Assembly (NCBI RefSeq): GCF_001194135.2
Contig: NC_068988.1
Location: forward strand, 83,081,066 to 83,115,450
Source: Octopus bimaculoides
Lineage: Eukaryota
Reading direction: 5' to 3'
DNA: 34,385 nt
Shown: positions 5,856 through 34,270 of the stretch, in pieces
How positions within the stretch are numbered: position 1 is the first letter of the stretch
Layout: each line of letters begins with the position of its first letter
The notes under the pieces: model-generated
What the model was told of the DNA's origin: nothing
Seen by the model: only the letters and a program-made list of their open reading frames with translations
Databases searched by the model: none
Program-made: the position numbers and the translations under genes

Positions 5856-7632
5856 GCCTGGCCCACCACACAACTTCTTTCGCTTGGGCCACCAGACAAA
5901 GAAATAGTGCCTGTTCTTCTCGACCGAGGGAAGGAAATGAGGCGACCTTCACAATGGACTCAGTGATTTCTGAAAGTTATCTATGGGCCCCGGCCCGAAA
6001 GTCCTTCAGAACTGACCAGCCAACGCATTCTCATCGTCGCACAGAATCTCCCCAAGAACGTCATCGCACCTGCCCGCCACTAACCCTCAATAGAACACCT
6101 GAGTGAAATTTCAACCGACCGCATTGCCCGAGTGACAGAGGACTGTGAGTGCTTGACGACACCCTAGGTGCCAGGTGCCGGGTACCCTGCCTCGGTCTAC
6201 GCTTGATCCAGGACTACAGCTCAGACAAAGAGATGAGCTGTGAGAAACTGTTTGACAAACAGTGACTACACCTGCTCACTGTCTAGGAAGTACTGGAAAT
6301 GTCGCAGCCTCAGCATATGTCTGCGCATCAGCAGTCACAGGATGCCCAGCCCTCCATTCAGCAGGTGTTGACAGCGAATGGAGCACCTGATAAGTGGAAC
6401 GCGCCCCTTATCACAGAAAGCGGAAAAGTACGCGTTGCAGTTTGGTCAGACGTGAACTAGAGCAAGGCACGATGGTCAGGTGATAATATATGACGGAGGT
6501 AATGTATGCATTCGCCACTTTTGCCCGACCTTTTAGGGATAGCTTTCTCTCGACCTATTTCTGGATGAGATTGGCCACCTTGTTCGTCAACTCGTCCAAG
6601 TTCTTCACCTGGAGATTTAGACCAAACCAGCCCCCCGAACAATTTAACTGGTCCTTCCGTCCAGCGCCCCATGACGTTATTGGACAGTATGAATCTGCTT
6701 CTCCAGGTGCCAAGCTGCAAGCCCACTGACTTTACTTGGTTAATTTTTGTTCCTGTCATCGCCTTGTTTTCTTTTAGAGCAGTGCCGACCAGGTCTATGG
6801 ACCTGCTATTCGACACCATGACGGTGACGTTGTCTACGTATGCTGACACGGTTCCCGCACGCCCTAATTCATGCGGCATATCTCTCAACACCTCCAATTT
6901 CCGCAGTAATGGCCCAAGAGCCAGTACATACAGAAGAGACGAGAGGGGACACTGTCGATGGACCGAATGCATGATGCTAAATGGTTCCGATAGGTAATCA
7001 TTTACCCGAACTACCGAGCAAATGTCGCTCTACATAGCAGCGATCCAGCCACGGAAAACGGGACCGAAATTGGCCGCCGTGAGAACGGCCACCAGGTATT
7101 GCTGGTCGACCCTATCGAAAGCTTTAGATTGATCCAAATTGATTACGGCTCTACACATGCCAATATCCTTACTCACCCTGTCTATGATGTATCGTATGAA
7201 GTGAAGTGGAAGTTGTCGTGGATGGATCTGCTTGGGATTAGACATGTTTGTGCCTCACCAACCAGTTCCTCGACGACGAGCGTCAACTTCTTCGCTAACA
7301 CCTTAGCCAAAATGCTAAAGTCTGCCTTCAGCAGCGTTATGGTCCTAAAGTTTCTATTTAATTTCCCCTTTTGGGGTCCTTTCTTAACAGTGCTACCACT
7401 CCTCGACTCATAGAATTGGGAATTCTCCCGTTCTGCTGCTAGTTGCAGTAGGATATCTGCCAAAAGTCCGCCCAGTTGCGGTAGATATCCGCCAAAAGAC
7501 ATACAGAAGCAAGCCTTATAAGGCAGACCATCCAAACCAGGCGATTTGTCCCCCGTGTAACTCGTCATCGCATACCGTATTTCCGCAGTTGTTATCGGTG
7601 TTTCGCAACACTCTGCTGCAGTTTCCAACAGT
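5856..7632 (-). mobile_element. L1/Tx1-clade non-LTR retrotransposon, ORF2 RT region, decayed
   Basis: ORFs 7182..7628 (KSPGLDGLP, FRTITLL..DFSILAKVLA), 7030..7245 (LDQSKAFDRV), 6457..6972 (PLSSLLYVLAL, AYVDNVTV). Confidence 0.9.
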
Positions 7633-7726
7633 CGTGGAATAATAATAATAATAATAATAGTGATGATGGACTCTCCCGTCGAAGAGTGTTCAGCTTATGC
7701 CGAATCAGATGCACAAATGATTTTTT

Positions 7727-7912
7727 TTATAGTGATCAAATGTATGTGTCGTACATTATTAGCTCACTCCCTCCATCTGCCTGAACAGGCGTGAGGTGCA
7801 CACGTCAGGTGACGAAGTGATCGCAGTGTTTTGCTGAAGAACGCAATGCACCGCTCGGTCTAGGGCTTGAGACCACGATCTCGCGATCGTGAGCGCAACA
7901 CCCTAACCACTA
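7727..7912 (-). mobile_element. tRNA-derived SINE, 5' part
   Basis: Minus strand TAGTGGTTAGGGTG.. A-box-like head, then TGCATTGCGTTCTTCAGCAAAACAC post-tRNA block. Confidence 0.6.
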
Positions 7913-7919
7913 ATCATAA

Positions 7920-8261
7920 TAAAACCAGGCATGATCGAATTGGCCAATACTTTCAGTAGAGAGTATGCCGTCACTATGATATCCCACACCCTAAGAACTG
8001 GTATGAATACCATCCAGAGCCAATCACTAACGGAGAGAATTACCAGCCTATAGGATTATAGGATACATACAGATAGGCAAATAAATATTAATGATCAGAA
8101 GTCATCATCAAAGACCTAAGACAAAAAAGGCTTGTTAATTGATATGACAGTGCCTACTGATAGAAACATAGCAGCAAAAGAATTTGAAAAACTATCAAAA
8201 CATAAGGACCTTGAGACTGAAATATCTAGGACATGGCAATTAAAAAAAAACAAAACCATCC
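7920..8261 (+). mobile_element. R4/Dong-type RLE LINE 3' region, left half (continues at 9882-10023)
   Basis: RHDRIGQY..WYEYHPEP..LIDMTVPTDRNIAAKEFEKLSKHKDLETEISRTWQLK; joining to 9882 restores ..KTIPVVVGVLEMIKKG. Confidence 0.85.
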
Positions 8262-9881
8262 CACATTGTTCCCAGAGTGGGAATTTATTTTTTTGGAAGA
8301 TCTTTAAAATGCATATTTTCTTATTTCTTTACTGCCCACAAGAGGCTAAACACAGAGGGGACAAACAAGGACAGACGAAGAAATTAAGTCGATTACATCG
8401 ACCCCAGTGCGTAACTGGTACTTAATTTATCGACCCCGAAAGGATGAAAGGCAAAGTCGACCTCGGCGGAATTTGAACTCAGAACGTAACGGCAGACGAA
8501 ATACCTCTAAGCATTTCGCCCGGTGTGGTAACGTTTCTGCCAGCTCGCCGCCTTAAATGCATATTTTCTGGTTCTCTAAACTCAAGAAATTACAAAGAAA
8601 AAGGCCTGAGTTTAAAATAATGTATAGTTCAATTTTTAAAGCTCTTTAAATTTGGCCAATTCAACGAAATTTACATTTTTTTTAGTATTATAAGATTGAA
8701 CATATTTTCTTTCACAAAAAAGATTTTAAACTTCCGTTTGAACTTATTTAGAAGCATTTTTTATTGTCTCTCAGTCAAGCTACATCCTAGAGTGCATAGG
8801 CCAACATAAATTTGAGAAATTTAAGAAAATAAGAAAAGCATGAAATATATTTGGTAAAACCCCCTCAAACTTGATAATTTTTTTAAAAATGACAAATTTT
8901 AACATATTAAGGGCTAACATATTTGACATCCTCAGCGTTTTATGTAAACTGTGGGAAAAAAATCAGTTCAGAGGGGTTAAAACGCCACACAGAAAGTATA
9001 ATTCCAATTTGGGTACCAAACATCAAAGCAAACCAAAATTGGATAAAATCGGTAATTATTGACCCCCAAAGTGATTAAATAAGTATAAAAACAGGAAACA
9101 TAAAATGGACTCCAAACCTGATAAATTTCTTGAAATAATTGATCTTAAATGCACTTTTATTGGTATTTAGCCTACTTTATGGGATAAAAATCGGATTAGG
9201 AAGGTCAGATTCCACCTTGGAGGATTTTACCGTGCTTACGCCGAAATTGAAGAAGGGCCAAAACACGAGATAACAAAAAGAAAATCCCTGGATTGAAACT
9301 TCCCTATAGTTTCCCCCCGCCAAAGAAAAAATACAATGAAAACCACCCACCCACCCCACCTATGATTCACAAAGAAAATCAGAATCATTTGCATTAAATT
9401 GTGAAAACTGATCACAACAAATATTGAAACAACAATGCTAAACAATAAATATGAGTAATATAGACCAGTCGGTAACATAGTGATTCGATTTTTGATTGCT
9501 CTTCTGTCAAAGCAGACATCTTCTGTTTTGAAGAGCGAGCTGTGTGACCAACTTTACCACAAATAGAACAACTTAGGCTGGGAAGTTTCGAAGCAATTCC
9601 TGGATGCGACATGATGGACATTCTTCTGAAGATGTCATGGATATCATCTTGCAGATAATCATTTTTAGCCGCAATACACCAAAAAGGCAATTTTGGTCGA
9701 AATGCCCTGATTTGGTTATTTGAATTCAGATCCCCATAAACTAAGAAAAAACAAATAAGTTTGATTCCAGCTGATATCCCTTAAAATTGTGGTTCAAACG
9801 AGCCTTCAACCGCTATCAAGTGATAATTTTAACCCGAGATATGATTTTCTTCCCTGAAATAGCCAATCTGGGCACAATGTG
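8262..9881 (-). mobile_element. Transib/RAG1-like DNA transposon, internally deleted non-autonomous copy
   Basis: TIRs CACATTGTTCCCAGAGTGG (8262-) and CACATTGTGCCCAGATTGG (reverse complement ending 9881), 17/19 identical; TSD CATCC (8257-8261)/CATTC (9882-9886); excision restores the host LINE frame; minus-strand peptide AAKNDYLQDDIHDIFRRMSIMSHPGIASK..CSICGKVGHTARSS. Confidence 0.8.
8322..8554 (-). mobile_element. tRNA-derived SINE family A, full length, with 15-bp TSD
   Basis: Head AAGGCGGCGAGCTGGCAG..GAGTTCAAATTCC; core GCCTTTCATCCTTTCGGGGTCGATAAATTAAGTACCAG (resembles the MetaSINE core from memory); TSD AAATGCATATTTTCT at 8307-8321 and 8555-8569. Confidence 0.92.
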
Positions 9882-10023
9882 CATTCCTGTTGTTGTAGGT
9901 GTCCTGGAAATGATCAAGAAAGGTAATGACAGATTTTTTGACCAGATCTCTGTGGAACCAACAATCAAGAAATTGAGTTGACATCAACCGCCCACACTCG
10001 TAGGGAAGTTCCTCTCCATCTAA
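9882..10023 (+). mobile_element. R4/Dong-type LINE 3' end, right half
   Basis: IPVVVGVLEMIKKG..PTIKKL....GKFLSI*, typical RLE C-terminus. Confidence 0.8.
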
Positions 10024-10097
10024 TATATACGTGCTTTAGGTATCTGGTTGAGACTCGGTTGGAAGATGAAATGTTTTATTAACCACAAAGGTCTACA

Positions 10098-11637
10098 TTG
10101 AGAAAAATATTGTCGACAGTACAGGACAAAACAAAGATTGTGTGTGTCGCGAAAATCTCAACAATTCTATGTGGTGAAAAGATTAGAAAACGACAACATT
10201 CCCACAAAAAACCTTCTTGGCAAGAGCGTATTCAACACAAAATTAAGCTACTTAGGTCTGACATAGAATGTTTAAAAAACCTTAAATTTAACAAGACTAT
10301 CAAACCTACAAAAACCCGAAAATTAAAGAAAAAAATTTAATATGAAAACCATATTTGACATTGATATCACCATAGAAACCATCAAACAAAATGTATGTGC
10401 TAAAGCCGCCCGCATAGCAAGGTATGAAAAGCGCGTTAGATTCTTTAAGGACAACATGTTCAAAAATAACCCAAAATTTTTTTACAGGAAGATACCAGTA
10501 GCAGTAAAGTCTGTCTCATCAAAAGAAGTGCAGGAATTTTGGAATAAAATTTGGTCAGAAGAAAAAACACCCAATGAAAAAAACCCTTGGATTGATAGAC
10601 TATCTATAGACTTAGACTCCTTAGAGGAGCAAAAGTGGGAGGGTGTCAAGGTAGAAGATATAAGATCTGCTCTCAGGTTAAGCAAATGGAAGTCTCCAGG
10701 AAAGGATAAAATTCCTAATCTCTGCCATGAACTACTAACAAAACTTTACAACAATGTTTTGCAACATCCCCGCTACTAATCCTCTGCCAAGAAAAGAGGG
10801 AGGCCGTGGACTTTTACAACTGGCATTAGCACTGAAGATTGCCACAATTGGCCTAGACACTTACCTGAAAAACTCTGAGAACTGGATGTTAAAACTTGTC
10901 TCAAAACATGAAAACAAGAAAGCATCATATTCAGTAACAAAACAGACAAAGGAATATCTAAGTGAATTCCGAATACAACAATTTCCAGAATTAGACGTAC
11001 TAGAAACAAGCGCAGAAAAAGCTAAGCGCATGAAAACCCGTGCTAAAACTACTGCCTTAGATATTCTGACTGACAAATGGCAAGAAAAACCTCTCAATGG
11101 CAAATACCCAAAGAGAGCCAATAATGCTGATGTTGACAAAGCTCTTACCCATCAATGGCTAATGACTTCTGTTTTAAAATTAGAAACAGAAGGGTTTATG
11201 ATAGCAGCCCAAGATCAATGCCTACTTATAAGGAACTACCAGGCTAACATATTAAAGAACGGCAGCTCCCTAATATGTCGTGTATGTCAACAACAAAATG
11301 AGACCATTGATCATGTTGTCTTCATGTGCAGTTTTCTTGTGCCTACAGAGTATTTCAACAGACATGATAGAGCTGCACAATATATTCACTGAGTAATTTG
11401 CAAAAACCTGGGCTTGTCCCATGATAAAAACTGGTGGGAACACAAACCACCCCCAGTGCTTGAAAATGATCACATCTCACTCCTCTGGAACTTCACCATT
11501 CAAACTGACAGAAAAATAGATGCAAATAGGTCAAACATCATATTGAAAGACTTCAGACAGTCATATCATGCCTCCTCATTGATATGACTCTCCCAATCGA
11601 TATAAACGTATCTGTCAAGACCTACCAAAAACCGAGT
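10098..11637 (+). mobile_element. R4/Dong-type LINE with the RT core deleted
   Basis: Pre-RT region (FFKDNMFKNNPKFFYR..WKSPGKDKIPN) joins at about 10770-10783 directly to LPRKEGGRGLL; then TEGFMIAAQDQ, CRVC..ETIDHVVFMC knuckle, RHD, and RLE region. Confidence 0.88.
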
Positions 11638-11639
11638 AA

Positions 11640-12916
11640 GCCGCCACGCAGAGGGAGTTGGCAACAGACTGACCGCCTGGCCATTGGAACGCGTCCCTTT
11701 CACAAGAAAATAAACAGGTTATGCTCCAATCTAATCAAGCAGTAATTGGGGAAAGGCACAACGGTCAGACGATAAATAATGACTGAGGCGATGTAGGCAT
11801 ACGCCACCTCTGCTCGACCTTTCAGAGATAACTTCCTCTCTGCCCATTTCTGGGTAAGAGAGGTCATCCTGTTCGTCACCTCTTCCCAATTCTTATCCAC
11901 CTGGAGGTCGGGACCAAACCAGTCCCCGAGCAGTTTAACTGGTCCGTCAGTTCAGCGTCCGGCATTGATTTTAGCCCCTACAACCGACTCATATTCCTTT
12001 ACAATGGAACCAACCGTCTCCATTTCGGAGGCGTCGGACACCATGACAGTGATGTCGTCCGTGTATGCAAACACTGCCCTCTCAAGTCCAATTTCGAAAG
12101 GGAGGCTTCTTAACTGTTTCAACTTCCGCAGCAGTAGCTCGAGAGCCAGCACATACAGAAGAGGTGACAGCAGGCAGCCCTGACGGACCGAACGTGCGAT
12201 ACTAAACGGTTTCGATAGGTGGCCATTTACTTTGACCACCGAGCAGGTGCTGCTGTGCATTGCAGCAATCCAACCTCTGAAAACGGGTCCAAAACCGGCC
12301 GCTTTCAAGTGGCGATGGTATACCCTATTGAAAGCTTTTCACTGATCTAAATTGATCAAGGGCCACCGAAGCCAGTTTTAGTCCCAGCCCTCTCTACGAT
12401 GTATCACATAAGGTGGAGGTTGTCATGGATAGACCTGCTCGGGATTGCGTACGTTTGTGCCTCCCCGACCAGACTACTTACGACAAGCGCCAATCTTTTC
12501 GCTAATAGCTTGGCCAAAATCTTAAACTCTGTGTTTAGCAAAGTTATGGGCCGAAAATTCCCTAGCATGTCATCATTGTCGGTGTCCTTTCTCAGCAGTG
12601 TTACTACACTCGGGCTAACAGCACTAGGAATCCTCCCGTTCTGTTGCCAGTTACTGTTGACATCTGCCAAGAGGCTGCCAAACAAATCTGCCATGAAAAC
12701 AGAATTGGATGGTCTGCCATCCAAACCTGGCGATTTGCGACTTGTGCAATCGCTCATCGCCTCCTGTATTTCAGAAGTTGTAATCAGCGTTTCCCAGAAT
12801 TTCGCGTCCGTCACCGAGAGCCTTGGTAGGCCGTCTAGGTCCGAAGTAAAGTTCGCTGACCCATCACCCTCCCCAAACAGCCGTTCAAAGTACTGCTGGA
12901 AAACTGCACACATCTG
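11640..12916 (-). mobile_element. L1/Tx1-clade LINE RT region, second copy
   Basis: KSPGLDG, FRPITLLNTEFKILAKLLA, SVRQGCLLSPLLYVLAL, AYTDDITV; homologous to 5856-7632. Confidence 0.9.
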
Positions 12917-13721
12917 NNNNNNNNNNNNNNNNNNNNNNNNNNNNNNNNNNNNNNNNNNNNNNNNNNNNNNNNNNNNNNNNNNNNNNNNNNNNNNNNNNNN
13001 NNNNNNNNNNNNNNNNNNNNNNNNNNNNNNNNNNNNNNNNNNNNNNNNNNNNNNNNNNNNNNNNNNNNNNNNNNNNNNNNNNNNNNNNNNNNNNNNNNNN
13101 NNNNNNNNNNNNNNNNNNNNNNNNNNNNNNNNNNNNNNNNNNNNNNNNNNNNNNNNNNNNNNNNNNNNNNNNNNNNNNNNNNNNNNNNNNNNNNNNNNNN
13201 NNNNNNNNNNNNNNNNNNNNNNNNNNNNNNNNNNNNNNNNNNNNNNNNNNNNNNNNNNNNNNNNNNNNNNNNNNNNNNNNNNNNNNNNNNNNNNNNNNNN
13301 NNNNNNNNNNNNNNNNNNNNNNNNNNNNNNNNNNNNNNNNNNNNNNNNNNNNNNNNNNNNNNNNNNNNNNNNNNNNNNNNNNNNNNNNNNNNNNNNNNNN
13401 NNNNNNNNNNNNNNNNNNNNNNNNNNNNNNNNNNNNNNNNNNNNNNNNNNNNNNNNNNNNNNNNNNNNNNNNNNNNNNNNNNNNNNNNNNNNNNNNNNNN
13501 NNNNNNNNNNNNNNNNNNNNNNNNNNNNNNNNNNNNNNNNNNNNNNNNNNNNNNNNNNNNNNNNNNNNNNNNNNNNNNNNNNNNNNNNNNNNNNNNNNNN
13601 NNNNNNNNNNNNNNNNNNNNNNNNNNNNNNNNNNNNNNNNNNNNNNNNNNNNNNNNNNNNNNNNNNNNNNNNNNNNNNNNNNNNNNNNNNNNNNNNNNNN
13701 NNNNNNNNNNNNNNNNNNNNN

Positions 13722-14460
13722 TCTATCATAGTTTTACAAACGCCTGACGACGTTTTAATCAAAAGTCTGTCCTTGGGTGTTTTGAGGATGAAATCCTCAA
13801 ATTCCTTTTCTTCTGTCTCTATACTATTCTTATTTTTGATTTACAAAATCAATCAATTCCCTGTTACACTTGTTCACAACGGTGAAATTGATGGATACAG
13901 TTCGTCTACAGTCTGATGAATATTTTTGAAGTTCTGTAATCGGTTGTTTCTCGGTTTCTTTAATTTCATGTTGTTGTTGATGATGTTACTGTCTTTGAAG
14001 TTGTTGATCTTGTTCTTGCAGTTTTTCCTGGAATAGTTGTGAATTGTGTTGCAGTTGTGGTTTCAGAATAAGTTCTTGTTGATTTCTTGGAGTAGGGCTA
14101 TGTACTCTCTTCCTCTCTCGCCTCCCCTCTTTTGTTATTGTGATCAATTGATCGTTCAGCTCTTCCTTCTCCATGTCATTGCAGTTGATGTTGGTTTGGG
14201 AGGAAGAAAATTCAGGAGAAACTTGCGTTTCCATGGGAACCGGGGGAAGATTCCTTCTTTGTCTTGGTTTGGGAGTGGGTGTAGGTGTAGGTGTAGGAGT
14301 CTTGAGCACTTGTTTATGATTTTTAACTTGTGGTGTTTGTAATGTTGGCAGCGGTGAGACTTTATTTTCCATTGTTTCGGGGCAGAAAACCTTTAAGTGG
14401 TTTATAGATCCACATTTATGGCATTTATGGGTCACATATAATACATATCCAATGTTCACT
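13722..14460 (-). mobile_element. Probable L1/Tx1 ORF1 remnant with CCHC zinc knuckle
   Basis: CHKCGSINHLKVFC (C-x2-C-x4-H-x4-C) followed by P/T/Q-rich low-complexity sequence (ORF 13986..14459). Confidence 0.6.
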
Positions 14461-22182: not shown

Positions 22183-22761
22183 TCTTTTTGGTATATAAAC
22201 ATTGTATTTTGAGAAATAANNNNNNNNNNNNNNNNNNNNNNNNNNNNNNNNNNNNNNNNNNNNNNNNNNNNNNNNNNNNNNNNNNNNNNNNNNNNNNNNN
22301 NNNNNNNNNNNNNNNNNNNNNNNNNNNNNNNNNNNNNNNNNNNNNNNNNNNNNNNNNNNNNNNNNNNNNNNNNNNNNNNNNNNNNNNNNNNNNNNNNNNN
22401 NNNNNNNNNNNNNNNNNNNNNNNNNNNNNNNNNNNNNNNNNNNNNNNNNNNNNNNNNNNNNNNNNNNNNNNNNNNNNNNNNNNNNNNNNNNNNNNNNNNN
22501 NNNNNNNNNNNNNNNNNNNNNNNNNNNNNNNNNNNNNNNNNNNNNNNNNNNNNNNNNNNNNNNNNNNNNNNNNNNNNNNNNNNNNNNNNNNNNNNNNNNN
22601 NNNNNNNNNNNNNNNNNNNNNNNNNNNNNNNNNNNNNNNNNNNNNNNNNNNNNNNNNNNNNNNNNNNNNNNNNNNNNNNNNNNNNNNNNNNNNNNNNNNN
22701 NNNNNNNNNNNNNNNNNNNNNNNNNNNNNNNNNNNNNNNNNNNNNNNNNNNNNNNNNNNNN

Positions 22762-24819: not shown

Positions 24820-26882
<2,063 letters not shown>

Positions 26883-26887
26883 CATTA

Positions 26888-27247
26888 TTATTACCTCCGA
26901 GTTAGCGAAAGCGGGGGTATTGTTTTCAGTTGTGTTTGCTTATTTGTTTGTCCTTGGACAAGATATCTCAAGAACCGCTGGATGGATTCGGATGAAACTT
27001 TCAGAGATGTTTGGCCTCGTGACTGGCACGAACTGATTAGATTTTGAGATTGATCCGTTACCGGACAAGGATTCTGAATTATTTTTCCTGTTTTTTCACT
27101 TAATTTTTGAGAGCGGTCGGGTTCATTTTTAGTATTCTTGTTTGTGAGTGCAGTCGAGTTTATTTCAGATATTCTCATTTTAAAAAGCATCGTTGAGAGG
27201 AGGTTGGCGTTGCCTTGGTGGAGGTTTGCGCTCTCTGAGTGCTCTTG

Positions 27248-28135: not shown

Positions 28136-28192
28136 TTCTGAACTGATACCCCGCCTTTGCCTTCCTTAATACTAAACTGAGGGGGAATTATT

Positions 28193-28405
28193 AAGGTGGC
28201 GAGCTCACAGAATCGTTAGCACGCCGGGAAAAATGCTTAGCAGCATTTCATCAGTCCTTTTGTTCTGAGTTTAAATTTCATCGAGGTCGACTTTGCCTTT
28301 CATCCTTTCAAGGTCGATAAAAATAAGTATCAACTGAGTACTAGGGTCGATGTAATCAACTTACCCCTACCCCGAATTTGCTGGCCTTGAGCCAAAATTT
28401 GAACC
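28193..28405 (+). mobile_element. SINE family A copy, alternative 3' tail
   Basis: AAGGTGGCGAGCT head and GTCGACTTTGCCTTTCATCC core as at 8322-8554. Confidence 0.85.
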
Positions 28406-28465: not shown

Positions 28466-29355
28466 TTCCATTTTACTTCTCAGAGCTCTCGATTTTACTC
28501 GCTCCGGTTAATTCTGTAAGAGCGGACAACAGCCTGTTGTCAAAGGTCTCACTGGGTCTCTTTCCACACCAAGTACCCATCGCAAAATCCTCACTGTCCC
28601 AAGCAGAGCAGTTTTCTGAGTATGTTCTCCCCTCGTGTCAATTCCAGTTTCTCCAACATATTTCCCAAACTAGGTTATTAGTGCTCCCAGAGCCTCTGCA
28701 ACTGCTGGGATAGCAATTACTCTCTTCATTGCATAAATTCGTGCAATTTTGTCTTTTAGTAGTTTGTATTTTTCAACCTTTTCCAACTCTTTGTCACCTA
28801 CGCGTGCGTTCCCATGTATGGCCAGTATCTATGACCTTAGTTTCTTTCTTCCTTTTATCCACTACAACAATGTCTGGTCTCCGATTCACTATTGTCGGTG
28901 ACGCCTTCTGGTTTATGTTCGTACTATTTCTGTGTTCTTTCAAAACTATACTTCTCATACAATCTCCAGTGAACAAACTTTGCCACGTCATCGTGTCTCC
29001 TTTTGTATTCCTTTCTGGCCAGTTGGATACACTCACTCACAATATGTGAGATTGTTTCGATTTTGTTGCTACATATCCTACAAAGGAGCGATTCACTGAA
29101 ACTTGGTGTAATTAGTTTTCAGAGCTTATTCTTGAGTGTTGCATATCAATGTCTCAGTGCATCCTTTCAGATTACTTTTCCTTAGCCACCTCCAAGTGTT
29201 GGTCTTGTCTTTCCATTTAATTTCTCTGAGGTATCGCCCATGCACCGTTTTAATTTTCCTATTGTTTAATTTTTGTTTTCCATCTTGTTTCTTAAATGTT
29301 TTTTCAGGTGTCACGTTTTCATTAGGTATCGTGTTATCATTATTATTTTTGCTTT
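28466..29355 (-). mobile_element. R4/Dong-type LINE 3' fragment (RLE domain)
   Basis: VHGRYLREI..TWRWLRKSNLKGCTETLICNTQE..RRHDDVAKFVHW..NRRPDIVVVDK..; ends on an (ATT)n-like tract at 28450-28465. Confidence 0.8.
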
Positions 29356-29461
29356 TCATCCTTTCGGCGTCGATGAAATAAGTACCAGTTGAGTATTGGG
29401 GTCGATGTAACCGACGAGCCCCTTCTCTAAAATTTCAGCCCTTGTGCCTATAGCAGAAAGG

Positions 29462-30485: not shown

Positions 30486-30723
30486 ATCCTACAAGTATCA
30501 AACATTTAACTTTTTGTCTTGCTGTGCCTTTACGTTACCCTTACATGCCTTGTCATATCTCTACACGCAAACTTTGCATTTCTTACTACCCTTCTCCCCA
30601 CTCATTTAGGCTCCCTCTATCCATTCACAGTTCTCGAGCATCATAGAGAAGTGTTTCCACCACCATCATACCCAATCACAAATCTATCCATCTCCTTCTA
30701 TCCTATCACAACAAGTAATATAT

Positions 30724-31335
30724 TATTTCTTTACTACCCACAAGGGGCTACACACAGAGGGGACAAACAAAGACAGACAAACGGATTAAGTCGATTATAT
30801 CGACCCCAGTGCGTAACTGGTACTTATTTAATCGACCCCGAAAGGATGAAAGGCAAAGTCGACCTCGACGGAATTTGAACTCAGAACGTAGCGGCAGACG
30901 AAATACCTATTTCGTTATTGCCCACAAGGGGCTAAACATAGAGGGAACAAACAAGAACAGACGAACGGATTAAGTCGATTACATCGACCCCAGTGCGTAA
31001 CTGGTACTTATTTAATCGACCCCGAAAGGATGAAANNNNNNNNNNCATACCCAATCACAAATCTATCCATCTCCTTCTATCCTATCACAACAAGTAATAT
31101 ATTATTTCTTTACTACCCACAAGGGGCTACACACAGAGGGGACAAACAAAGACAGACAAACGGATTAAGTCGATTATATCGACCCCAGTGCGTAACTGGT
31201 ACTTATTTAATCGACCCCGAAAGGATGAAAGGCAAAGTCGACCTCGGCTGAATTTGAACTCAGAACGTAGCGGCAGACGAAATACCGTTAAGCATTTCGC
31301 CCGGCGTGCTAACGTTTCTGCCAGCTCGCCGCCTT
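30724..31335 (-). mobile_element. Cluster of three SINE family A copies/partials (30724-30907, 30908-31035, 31103-31335)
   Basis: Near-identical to 8322-8554; 30667-30867 is repeated exactly at 31046-31246 across a 10-N gap. Confidence 0.85.
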
Positions 31336-31732: not shown

Positions 31733-31947
31733 CTTTCTAGTATAGGCACTAGGCCTGAAATTTGGGGGGAGGAGGATAGCCGATTACATCGAGCCCAGCG
31801 CTCGACTGGTACTTATTTCGTCATCTTCGAAAGGTTGAAAGACAAAGTCGATATCGGGCGACATTTGACCTCAGAACCTAAAGACGGACGACCTGTCGCT
31901 AAGCGTTTTGCCCGGCGTGCTAAGCATTTTGCCAGCTCGCCGCCTTA
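31733..31947 (-). mobile_element. SINE family A, diverged full-length copy
   Basis: AAGGCGGCGAGCTGGC head, core, and GGCCTAGTGCCTATACTAGAAAG tail. Confidence 0.8.
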
Positions 31948-33688: not shown

Positions 33689-34270
33689 ACACATACATAC
33701 ATACATATACGTGCGTATGTGGATGGATGGATGGATGGATGGATGGATGGGTGGATGGATGGACGGATGGATGAATAGATGGATGGATGACCACACAGAG
33801 TGGTTCACAGGTAGACAGCCGAACTGACAGTTTCATGGAAAGTCATAAAATAGAAGGATGGATAGATGAATGGGGAGATATGTGCATGTGCGTGTATGTT
33901 TGCGTGAATGTTTCGATGCATGTGTATATGCATGCGTATATGAGCATGTATCAATTTATATGTAAGTGCATATGACTGTGCGAACTTTTGCAGTTTGTGT
34001 TTATATATACTTGTCAATGTGTGTGTGTGTGTATATACATATACATATATATATATNNNNNNNNNNNNNNNNNNNNNNNNNNNNNNNNNNNNNNNNNNNN
34101 NNNNNNNNNNNNNNNNNNNNNNNNNNNNNNNNNNNNNNNNNNNNNNNNNNNNNNNNNNNNNNNNNNNNNNNNNNNNNNNNNNNNNNNNNNNNNNNNNNNN
34201 NNNNNNNNNNNNNNNNNNNNNNNNNNNNNNNNNNNNNNNNNNNNNNNNNNNNNNNNNNNNNNNNNNNNNN

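What the first reader, a model, noticed from the sequence alone, without database searches (positions are those of the whole stretch)
8262..9881. Transib/RAG1-like transposon remnant carrying a C-x2-C-x3-G-H tail motif
Seen: two inverted termini starting CACATTG (17/19 identical), a 5-bp near-perfect TSD (CATCC/CATTC), and exact restoration of the interrupted LINE frame on excision. Also seen: a minus-strand peptide AAKNDYLQDDIHDIFRRMSIMSHPGIASKLPSLSCSICGKVGHTARSS (about 9672-9529). Established: CAC-starting RSS-heptamer-like TIRs with 5-bp TSDs mark Transib and RAG transposons. Transib C-termini contain an (A)RK..D.F.R....S.P.I.S-like helix, and invertebrate RAG1-like proteins are described with a C-terminal C-x2-C-x3-G-H-x4-C motif that vertebrate RAG1 lacks. 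Inference: this is a deletion derivative of a family bridging Transib-type core and RAG1L-type tail, once mobile in this genome. The last Cys is Ser here and the catalytic core is deleted.
Basis: partly seen in the sequence, partly recalled or inferred. Interest (0 to 1): 0.85.

Follow-up and report, generated by a model that had tools for sequence, protein, structure and literature searches.

The report
Dead, gutted Transib DNA transposon copy

Summary
Window 8262-9881 has CAC-starting inverted ends (17/19 identical) flanked by CATCC/CATTC. Removing the element plus 5 bp restores an open LINE reading frame. The minus-strand peptide is real transposase sequence: an exhaustive search gave 33 relatives, including ~700-aa proteins whose C-terminus it matches. 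A profile of 16 full-length relatives matches the element only over its last 68 positions (69.6 bits). That profile hits Helicoverpa Transib transposase at 1.5e-46 and RAG1 at about 3e-11. A predicted structure of one relative matches only Transib, RAG1 and RAG1L structures. Three full-length relatives have CAC[A/T]GTGTGCCCAG ends, perfect 5-bp duplications, a single gene and no RAG2-like ORF. The window's two ends are also homologous at DNA level to their 5' and 3' ends. So this is an internal-deletion derivative of a Transib element, later hit by a SINE, and now dead. Two corrections apply. The missing last Cys is a trait of the whole nearest clade, which has a conserved His 7-8 residues after the motif His; that His is Gln here. 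Transibs with a RAG1L-type zinc-knuckle tail are already published (Subgroup I, CTT1). I rate it a new member of a known kind, of low to moderate interest.

The parts
8257..8261 (.). Left copy of the 5-bp target-site duplication (CATCC)
   Evidence: a 4/5 match to the right copy. Removing the element plus 5 bp restores the LINE frame.
8262..8285 (-). 3' TIR in transposase sense: CACATTGTTCCCAGAGTGGGAATT
   Evidence: It resembles the 3' TIRs of relatives: L007 CACTGTGTGCCCAGAGTGTGAATT and L005 CACAGTGTGCCCAGCCCTGGAATT.
8262..8638 (-). 3' subterminal region, interrupted by the SINE at 8322-8569. It is homologous to the 3' end of a full-length relative.
   Evidence: positions 1244-1372 of the SINE-free element match L005 11385-11524 at 66% over 140 bp, E 4e-5.
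8322..8554 (-). Later SINE insertion, flanked by a 15-bp duplication AAATGCATATTTTCT (8307-8321 and 8555-8569)
   Evidence: 91-93% identity to SINE copies at 30723-31335 and 78-87% to older copies at 28191-28363, 29348-29415 and 31778-31947. The self-hits show an exact 15-bp direct repeat.
8570..9477 (-). Non-coding region downstream of the transposase stop. Measured from the 3' end it is about 970 bp once the SINE is removed, matching the ~1 kb 3' regions of L002 and L006.
   Evidence: No match to the transposase profile in any frame.
9478..9678 (-). Remnant of the transposase C-terminus: last CTD helix plus the C-x2-C-x3-GH knuckle tail. Weak homology may extend up to about 9744.
   Evidence: family profile positions 645-712 of 714, 69.6 bits, E 4e-23; phmmer hits down to 8.8e-15, with alignments to P0007 and P0014 starting at query residues 10-13.
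9744..9793 (-). Interval containing the internal-deletion junction. The 5' UTR remainder and about 620 codons of the transposase are missing.
   Evidence: DNA homology to the 5' ends of relatives stops at 9793. Protein homology starts at or after about 9744.
9793..9881 (-). 5' terminal region including the 5' TIR CACATTGTGCCCAGATTGGCTATT (9858-9881)
   Evidence: 75% identity to L008 5506-5592 and 77% to L006 6127-6217. A 51-bp subterminal motif occurs three times in L006.
9882..9886 (.). Right copy of the target-site duplication (CATTC)
8132..8261 (+). Upstream part of the interrupted LINE ORF2 tail
9887..9981 (+). Downstream part of the interrupted LINE ORF2 tail

Best explanation
The element at 8262-9881 is a non-autonomous internal-deletion derivative of a Transib-superfamily DNA transposon. 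Autonomous relatives are about 4-5 kb and carry one intronless gene for a transposase of about 700-715 aa. That protein has a RAG1-like RNase-H DDE core, a ZnC2/ZnH2 zinc site, an N-terminal GRP motif and a C-terminal zinc-knuckle tail. By established Transib/RAG biochemistry (inferred, not tested here), the transposase binds the CAC-heptamer ends, nicks, forms hairpins on the flanking DNA, excises the element and integrates it with a 5-bp stagger. This copy landed in the 3' end of a LINE ORF2 and made the CATCC duplication. It keeps about 90 bp of the 5' end, the last 68-85 codons, the ~1 kb 3' region and the 3' end. It lacks about 2.5 kb, including the whole catalytic core. Either it was mobilised in trans already deleted, or it lost its core in place. 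A SINE later inserted into it. Point mutations have since hit the TSD, the TIRs and the probable fourth zinc ligand (His to Gln). Where relatives stop after ...LYY/F, this copy reads on through a CGA codon. It is now inert.
For: Shown directly:
- TIRs, TSD and frame restoration.
- The peptide belongs to a protein family of about 700 aa.
- The family profile matches the element only at its extreme C-terminus, 69.6 bits.
- That family is Transib/RAG1-like by sequence. P0002 against the PDB gives only HzTransib, at 6e-23. Profile A1 gives HzTransib at 1.5e-46 (162 bits) and RAG1 at about 3e-11 (45 bits). Pfam RAG1 matches P0007 at 1e-8.
- It is also Transib/RAG1-like by predicted structure. The model has pLDDT 79.9. 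All 49 significant PDB matches are HzTransib, RAG1 or BbRAG1L, the best being HzTransib with a target-normalised TM-score of 0.82.
- Three full-length relatives have TIRs CAC[A/T]GTGTGCCCAG... with perfect 5-bp TSDs: CATCT, CATTT and CGATG.
- The window TIRs share the TGTGCCCAG core and the same difference between 5' and 3' ends.
- Both termini and the tail coding sequence are homologous at DNA level to relatives.
- L008 is an independent internal-deletion derivative of the same lineage.
- Full-length elements have no RAG2/kelch ORF.
Against: No copy closer than about 76% nucleotide identity was available, so the autonomous parent in this genome was not seen. The catalytic core cannot be tested in the window itself. 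The TSD is imperfect (4/5). The cleavage and integration mechanism is inferred from HzTransib and RAG literature, not tested. Host identity was not established.
Confidence: 0.9

Rival explanations
1. It is a remnant of a RAGL transposon (RAG1L plus RAG2L gene pair) rather than a Transib.
For: It has CAC TIRs, a 5-bp TSD and a CCGH knuckle tail like the CTT* of invertebrate RAG1L (PMC7204232, PMC10462144). The relatives also carry an alpha11-12-like insert that HzTransib lacks.
Against: Full-length relatives carry one gene and no kelch/RAG2 ORF. The family profile scores 162 bits to HzTransib against 45 bits to RAG1, and BbRAG1L is absent at E<=1. The TIR lacks the AAA at positions 8-10 of the protostome RAGL consensus (PMC7204232). 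That study screened octopus WGS and reported molluscan RAGL only in bivalves.
Confidence: 0.04
2. A full-length autonomous Transib inserted here and lost its core afterwards by a local deletion, so the element never moved as a short non-autonomous copy.
For: Nothing in the window distinguishes the two orders of events. Only one copy is visible.
Against: Internal-deletion derivatives that keep both ends are the usual product of abortive gap repair and are commonly mobilised in trans (general knowledge). L008 shows the lineage makes such derivatives. Neither point is decisive.
Confidence: 0.3
3. It is a CACTA/Chapaev (CMC) or MULE element whose transposase happens to end in a CCHC knuckle.
For: Chapaev and CMC ends also start with CAC. 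Plant MULE transposases often end in a CCHC knuckle (from memory). P0002 gives a weak Pfam Transposase_mut hit, E 0.13.
Against: Sequence and fold of the full-length relatives are unambiguously Transib/RAG1. The TSD is 5 bp in 3 of 3 relatives and in the window.
Confidence: 0.01
4. The peptide is a chance ORF with a chance zinc-knuckle motif inside an unrelated MITE.
For: Searched alone, the peptide gave only weak generic CCHC matches in Pfam and the PDB and nothing in the word-index search.
Against: Exhaustive phmmer gives 33 hits down to 8.8e-15, aligned over 60-80 residues well beyond the knuckle. The family profile scores 69.6 bits.
Confidence: 0.01

Closest known systems
Transib superfamily DNA transposons (Kapitonov & Jurka 2005, PMC1131882; Helicoverpa zea Transib structures 6PQN, 6PQX)
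   Same: CAC-heptamer TIRs, 5-bp TSD and a single transposase gene. The relatives' transposase is homologous over nearly the whole HzTransib chain, including the last helix retained in the window. HzTransib is the best structural match, with a target-normalised TM-score of 0.82.
   Different: The relatives are about 200 aa longer than HzTransib. They have an N-terminal extension with a GRP motif, a ~50-residue insert after the ZnC2 cysteines where RAG1 has alpha11-12, and a zinc-knuckle tail. The window copy keeps only the ends and the tail.
Subgroup I Transibs with a CTT1 tail (Tao et al. 2022, PMC9435367)
   Same: It shares the defining features listed in that paper: a CCGH-type C-terminal tail, a region equivalent to alpha11-12, a GRP-type NBD and asymmetric TIRs. 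All were seen in the relatives here.
   Different: No phylogeny against that data set was run. The nearest clade replaces the last Cys of C-x2-C-x3-GH-x4-C with Ser and has a conserved His at +7/+8. I have not seen that variant described.
RAGL transposons / ProtoRAG (RAG1L plus RAG2L; PMC7204232, PMC10462144)
   Same: Same fold: BbRAG1L 6b40_A gives a target-normalised TM-score of 0.74. Also a CAC TIR, a 5-bp TSD and a knuckle tail of the same motif type.
   Different: No RAG2L gene. Sequence identity is much lower, 17% to BbRAG1L against 23% to HzTransib. The TIR lacks the conserved A-rich TR2 element.

Membership tests
Transib superfamily | Transposase homologous to the Transib/RAG1 DDE core (RNase-H fold with ZnC2/ZnH2) | tested here: inconclusive
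   The core is absent from the window copy; the profile matches only positions 645-712 of 714. In the full-length relatives to which the remnant belongs it is met: HzTransib at 1.5e-46 and RAG1 at 3e-11. D242, D353, E612, C368, C371, H589 and H594 are invariant.
Transib superfamily | C-terminal region homologous to the Transib transposase C-terminus | tested here: met
   Window 9478-9678 (-) scores 69.6 bits against the family profile. The same profile columns align to HzTransib residues 433-463.
Transib superfamily | TIRs beginning 5'-CAC with an RSS-heptamer-like terminus | tested here: met
   CACATTG at both ends, 17/19 TIR identity. Relatives have CACAGTG or CACTGTG.
Transib superfamily | 5-bp target-site duplication | tested here: met
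   CATCC/CATTC with frame restoration, and an uninterrupted LINE paralog. Three of three full-length relatives have perfect 5-bp TSDs.
Transib superfamily | Single transposase gene, no RAG2-like partner | tested here: met
   L002 9031-13147 and L005 6518-11524 have no other long ORF and no Kelch or RAG2 Pfam hit.
Subgroup I Transib (Tao 2022) | CTT1 (CCGHC-type) tail, alpha11-12-equivalent region, asymmetric TIRs | tested here: inconclusive
   The features are present in relatives, but the last Cys is replaced in the nearest clade. Membership in the paper is defined by phylogeny, which was not run.
RAGL transposon | Convergent RAG1L-RAG2L gene pair between the TIRs | tested here: not met
   No RAG2L or kelch ORF in full-length relatives.
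RAGL transposon | TIR fitting CACTWMCAAACKTYKBB with conserved AAA at positions 8-10 (protostome consensus, PMC7204232) | tested here: not met
   Positions 8-10 of the window TIRs are TTC and TGC.
RAGL transposon | C-x2-C-x3-G-H-x4-C tail | tested here: not met
   The window reads CSICGKVGHTARSS with no final Cys, as do 37 relatives.
CMC/Chapaev or MULE | Transposase of that superfamily in full-length copies | tested here: not met

The most novel reading that the evidence does not exclude
The fossil may mark an uncatalogued invertebrate lineage of RAG1-proximal, Subgroup-I-type Transibs; a cephalopod host is only a guess from memory. This lineage would combine a GRP-type NBD, the alpha11-12 region and a knuckle tail in which the fourth zinc ligand has moved from Cys (+5) to His (+7/+8). 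Its relatives carry exact RSS-consensus CACAGTG ends. Intact, possibly active copies may still exist, since uninterrupted 702-716-aa ORFs are present in environmental assemblies.
Probability: 0.25. Interest if true: 0.45.

Novelty: new member of a known kind. Interest (0 to 1): 0.3.

Why it matters
For genome annotation it settles what the stretch is: a Transib deletion derivative nested in a LINE and itself hit by a SINE, which gives a relative order of three insertions. For RAG evolution it adds little, because Transibs with RAG1L-like tails, NBD and alpha11-12 are already described. Two points may be of use to specialists. The first is the family of intact ~700-aa relatives recovered here, with CACAGTG ends and 5-bp TSDs. 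The second is the clade-wide swap of the last knuckle Cys for a downstream His, which could be tested for its effect on TIR binding. A mollusc-wide survey found only one Transib with an intact DDE ORF (PMC10294476), so a molluscan Transib lineage would be a modest addition if the host is confirmed.

Tried and rejected
- Pfam and PDB searches with the peptide alone gave only sub-threshold generic CCHC knuckle matches and no Transib or RAG1 hit.
- The word-index protein search with the peptide found nothing. Only the exhaustive phmmer search recovered relatives.
- There is no second copy of the element or its TIRs in the window.
- I suspected coding homology (ZnH2 region) in 'NYHLIAVEGSFEPQF' near the 5' end. 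I rejected this because that stretch is a non-coding subterminal DNA motif shared with L008 and repeated three times in L006.
- Host identification failed. A LINE ORF gave a best hit of only 52% identity, with the named hits in cnidarians, a shrimp and a coelacanth. Searching papers for SINE 20-mers found nothing. The octopus guess rests only on my memory of the SINE sequence.
- The machine-read alignment supplement of Martin 2020 is corrupted, with rows repeated, so I did not use it to compare RAG1L tails.
- L003 and L004 showed long inverted repeats around the gene rather than short CAC TIRs. I did not resolve them.
- I skipped a metagenome-wide TIR pattern scan because chance hits were expected and the evidence was already sufficient.

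Full report

Yes. The two ends of 8262-9881 read CACATTGTTCCCAGAGTGG and, as reverse complement, CACATTGTGCCCAGATTGG. They are 17/19 identical. The degenerate pattern occurs nowhere else in the 34-kb window, against 0.05 expected by chance.

The flanking pentamers are CATCC and CATTC. Joining the flanks with one pentamer removed gives a single open frame, LLIDMTVPTDRNIAAKEFEKLSKHKDLETEISRTWQLKKNKTIPVVVGVLEMIKKGNDRFFDQISVEPTIKKLS. This is the tail of a LINE ORF2. A diverged paralog at 25102-25251 (-) reads ...KVIPVVIGALG... without interruption. Only a 5-bp duplication therefore reproduces the ancestral IPVV junction.

**2. What is the peptide?**

Searched alone, it gave only sub-threshold generic CCHC zinc-knuckle matches in Pfam and the PDB. 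The word-index protein search found nothing.

The exhaustive phmmer search of 1.84 billion representatives gave 33 hits at E<=1e-3, the best at 8.8e-15. In the long hits the match is at the extreme C-terminus: P0002 (702 aa) at residues 619-697 and P0012 (716 aa) at 657-714. A follow-up search with P0002 gave 34 relatives, many of 700-720 aa.

These proteins are Transib/RAG1-type transposases.
- P0002 against all PDB sequences hits only Helicoverpa zea Transib (6PQN), at E 6.3e-23, over nearly the whole chain.
- A profile of 16 full-length members (A1) hits HzTransib at 1.5e-46 (162 bits) and RAG1 at about 3e-11 (45 bits).
- Pfam RAG1 matches P0007 at 1e-8.
- An AlphaFold model of P0002 has pLDDT 79.9 and pTM 0.67. 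It gives 49 significant PDB matches, all HzTransib, RAG1 or BbRAG1L.
- Best target-normalised TM-scores in that search are 0.82 for HzTransib (23% identity), 0.74 for RAG1 and 0.74 for BbRAG1L (17% identity). The next hit, Mos1, has E 0.45.

Invariant family residues include the DDE triad positions D242, D353 and E612, the ZnC2 cysteines C368 and C371, and the ZnH2 histidines H589 and H594, in P0002 numbering. D353 and E612 align with RAG1 D708 and E962. D242 aligns with the corresponding Asp of HzTransib.

HzTransib ...SRKKSRQASNEDILNMLIISSDPLIS aligns with the family's ...ARQNSMKNNLHDIFRRMLIRSHPSIA.

**3. How much of the transposase is left in the window?**

I searched the A1 profile against all six frames of the element with filters off. 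It matches only minus frame 2, at profile positions 645-712 of 714, with 69.6 bits and E 4e-23. That corresponds to window 9478-9678 (-). Single-sequence alignments extend weakly to about 9744. No other part of the protein survives in any frame.

**4. Do the ends belong to the same family?**

Yes. Around full-length genes on long contigs I found CAC-starting inverted repeats with perfect 5-bp duplications:

| Locus | Element | 5' TIR / 3' TIR | TSD |
|---|---|---|---|
| L002 | 9031-13147 | CACTGTGTGCCCAGGATC / CACTGTGTGCCCAGACCTGG | CATCT |
| L005 | 6518-11524 | CACAGTGTGCCCAGAAGTC / CACAGTGTGCCCAGCCCTGG | CATTT |
| L006 | 6127-10451 | CACAGTGTGCCCAAAATGGC / CACAGTGTGCCCAGACCTGG | CGATG |

The window TIRs share the TGTGCCCAG core. 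They also share the family's difference between the two ends: the 5' end reads ...ATTGGCTATT (L006 ...AATGGCAAAT) and the 3' end reads ...GGGAATTTA (L005 ...TGGAATTTA, L007 ...GTGAATTTA).

Homology extends beyond the TIRs at DNA level.
- Window 9793-9881 matches the 5' ends of L008 (75%) and L006 (77%).
- The SINE-free 3' end matches L005 11385-11524 at 66% over 140 bp.
- The tail coding sequence matches L008 at 76%.

The orientation of the ends agrees with the strand of the peptide. The ~970 bp between the ancestral stop and the 3' end, after removing the SINE, matches the ~1 kb 3' regions of L002 and L006.

L008 is itself a different internal-deletion derivative. It has a 5' end, then a mid-protein segment, then the tail. 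Such derivatives therefore recur in this lineage.

**5. Transib or RAGL?**

Transib. The full-length relatives carry a single intronless gene. No other long ORF and no Kelch or RAG2 domain lies between the TIRs. The TIR does not fit the protostome RAGL consensus CACTWMCAAACKTYKBB with its conserved AAA (PMC7204232). By sequence the family is much nearer HzTransib than RAG1.

The family does have features that HzTransib lacks and RAG1/RAG1L have.
- A ~50-residue insert after the ZnC2 cysteines. It aligns with RAG1 but is skipped in the HzTransib alignment.
- An N-terminal GRP motif.
- The knuckle tail.

This is the combination Tao et al. 2022 describe for Subgroup I Transibs: CTT1, alpha11-12, NBD and asymmetric TIRs (PMC9435367). 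PMC10462144 also states that the CCGHC tail has been identified in Transib transposons. The 'bridging family' is therefore already in the literature. I did not run a phylogeny, so subgroup placement is inferred from features only.

**6. The tail motif**

The motif itself is a generic nucleic-acid-binding zinc knuckle (PMC10462144). Among relatives with the upstream helix, 10 have the canonical C-x2-C-x3-GH-x4-C. Another 37, including all those nearest to the window, read C-x2-C-x3-GH-[TS]ARS-x-x-H. These have no final Cys and carry a conserved His at +7/+8.

The window has Gln at the His position (GHTARSSKQK). Where relatives stop after ...ESLYY/F, the window reads on through a CGA codon (sequence). 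Both are consistent with neutral decay. That the His is the fourth zinc ligand is my inference and is untested.

**7. History and mechanism**

The following order is shown.
1. A LINE inserted first.
2. The Transib-derived element then inserted into its ORF2 tail, with a 5-bp TSD.
3. A SINE (8322-8554) later inserted into the element. It is flanked by an exact 15-bp duplication, and other copies in the window are 78-93% identical.

The deletion junction lies between 9744 and 9793. Whether the element moved as a short copy or was deleted in place cannot be told from one copy. The chemistry is inferred from published HzTransib and RAG work: CAC recognition, nick, hairpin and 5-bp staggered integration. 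It was not tested here.

**8. Context and limits**

The window is repeat-rich eukaryotic DNA with assembly gaps, LINE reverse-transcriptase fragments, SINEs and microsatellites. From memory the SINE resembles an octopus SINE. I could not confirm the host: the best protein match of a LINE ORF was 52% and the literature sequence search was empty. The nearest relatives come from unnamed ENA and TARA assemblies. No closer copy than about 76% nucleotide identity was available.

**9. Verdict**

It overstated novelty, and one detail needs correcting: the Cys-to-Ser change belongs to the clade, not to this copy. The element is a dead member of a known kind. Interest is low to moderate.

Noticed in passing
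window 8322-8554 (TSDs 8307-8321 and 8555-8569); also 30723-31335, 28191-28363, 29348-29415, 31778-31947: A ~233-bp SINE is inserted inside the Transib remnant with an exact 15-bp target duplication. Copies at 30723-31335 are 91-93% identical, and those at 30723-30908 and 30908-31035 abut each other. Three other copies are 78-87% identical. From memory it resembles an octopus SINE; this was not verified.
   Followed up: partly
relatives P0001-P0081 (tails); window 9529-9570: In the clade nearest the window, the last Cys of the C-x2-C-x3-GH-x4-C tail is replaced (usually by Ser) and a His is conserved 7-8 residues after the motif His. This holds for 37 proteins, against 10 with the canonical motif. 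It may be a ligand swap to a CCHH knuckle.
   Followed up: partly
L008 5506-6255: Another non-autonomous derivative of the same lineage. Its 5' end (CATATTGTGCCCAGATTGGC) is followed directly by a mid-transposase segment (ZnC2 region) and then the tail, which implies two internal deletions.
   Followed up: partly
L006 6165-6217, 6303-6353, 6480-6530; window 9793-9843: A ~51-bp subterminal motif (TTATCAC.TGATAG..T.GA.GGCTCG) occurs three times near the 5' end of a full-length relative and once in the window copy. It may be a set of transposase-binding repeats.
   Followed up: no
L003 6445-6900 and 10800-11696; L004 6155-6620 and 10144-10609: Two family genes sit inside long (hundreds of bp), near-perfect inverted repeats rather than short CAC TIRs. 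The structure was not resolved.
   Followed up: no
window 13986-14459 (-): A 157-aa ORF starts with a CCHC-like knuckle (CHKCGSINHLKVFC), followed by a Pro/Thr-rich repeat. It may be a LINE ORF1 or gag-like fragment. Pfam hits are only weak.
   Followed up: partly
window 6457-7628 (-), 10342-11392 (+), 11952-12308 (-), 25102-26293 (-), 26393-26905 (+): Multiple decayed LINE reverse-transcriptase fragments (Pfam RVT_1, zf-RVT) lie on both strands. The whole window is a nest of retroelements with eight N gaps (the large ones at 813-1621, 12917-13721, 22220-22761 and 34057-34270).
   Followed up: partly
PMC7204232, supplementary file 6: The machine-read text of the published RAG1L alignment is corrupted: identical rows are repeated for different species. 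It cannot be used as sequence data.
   Followed up: yes
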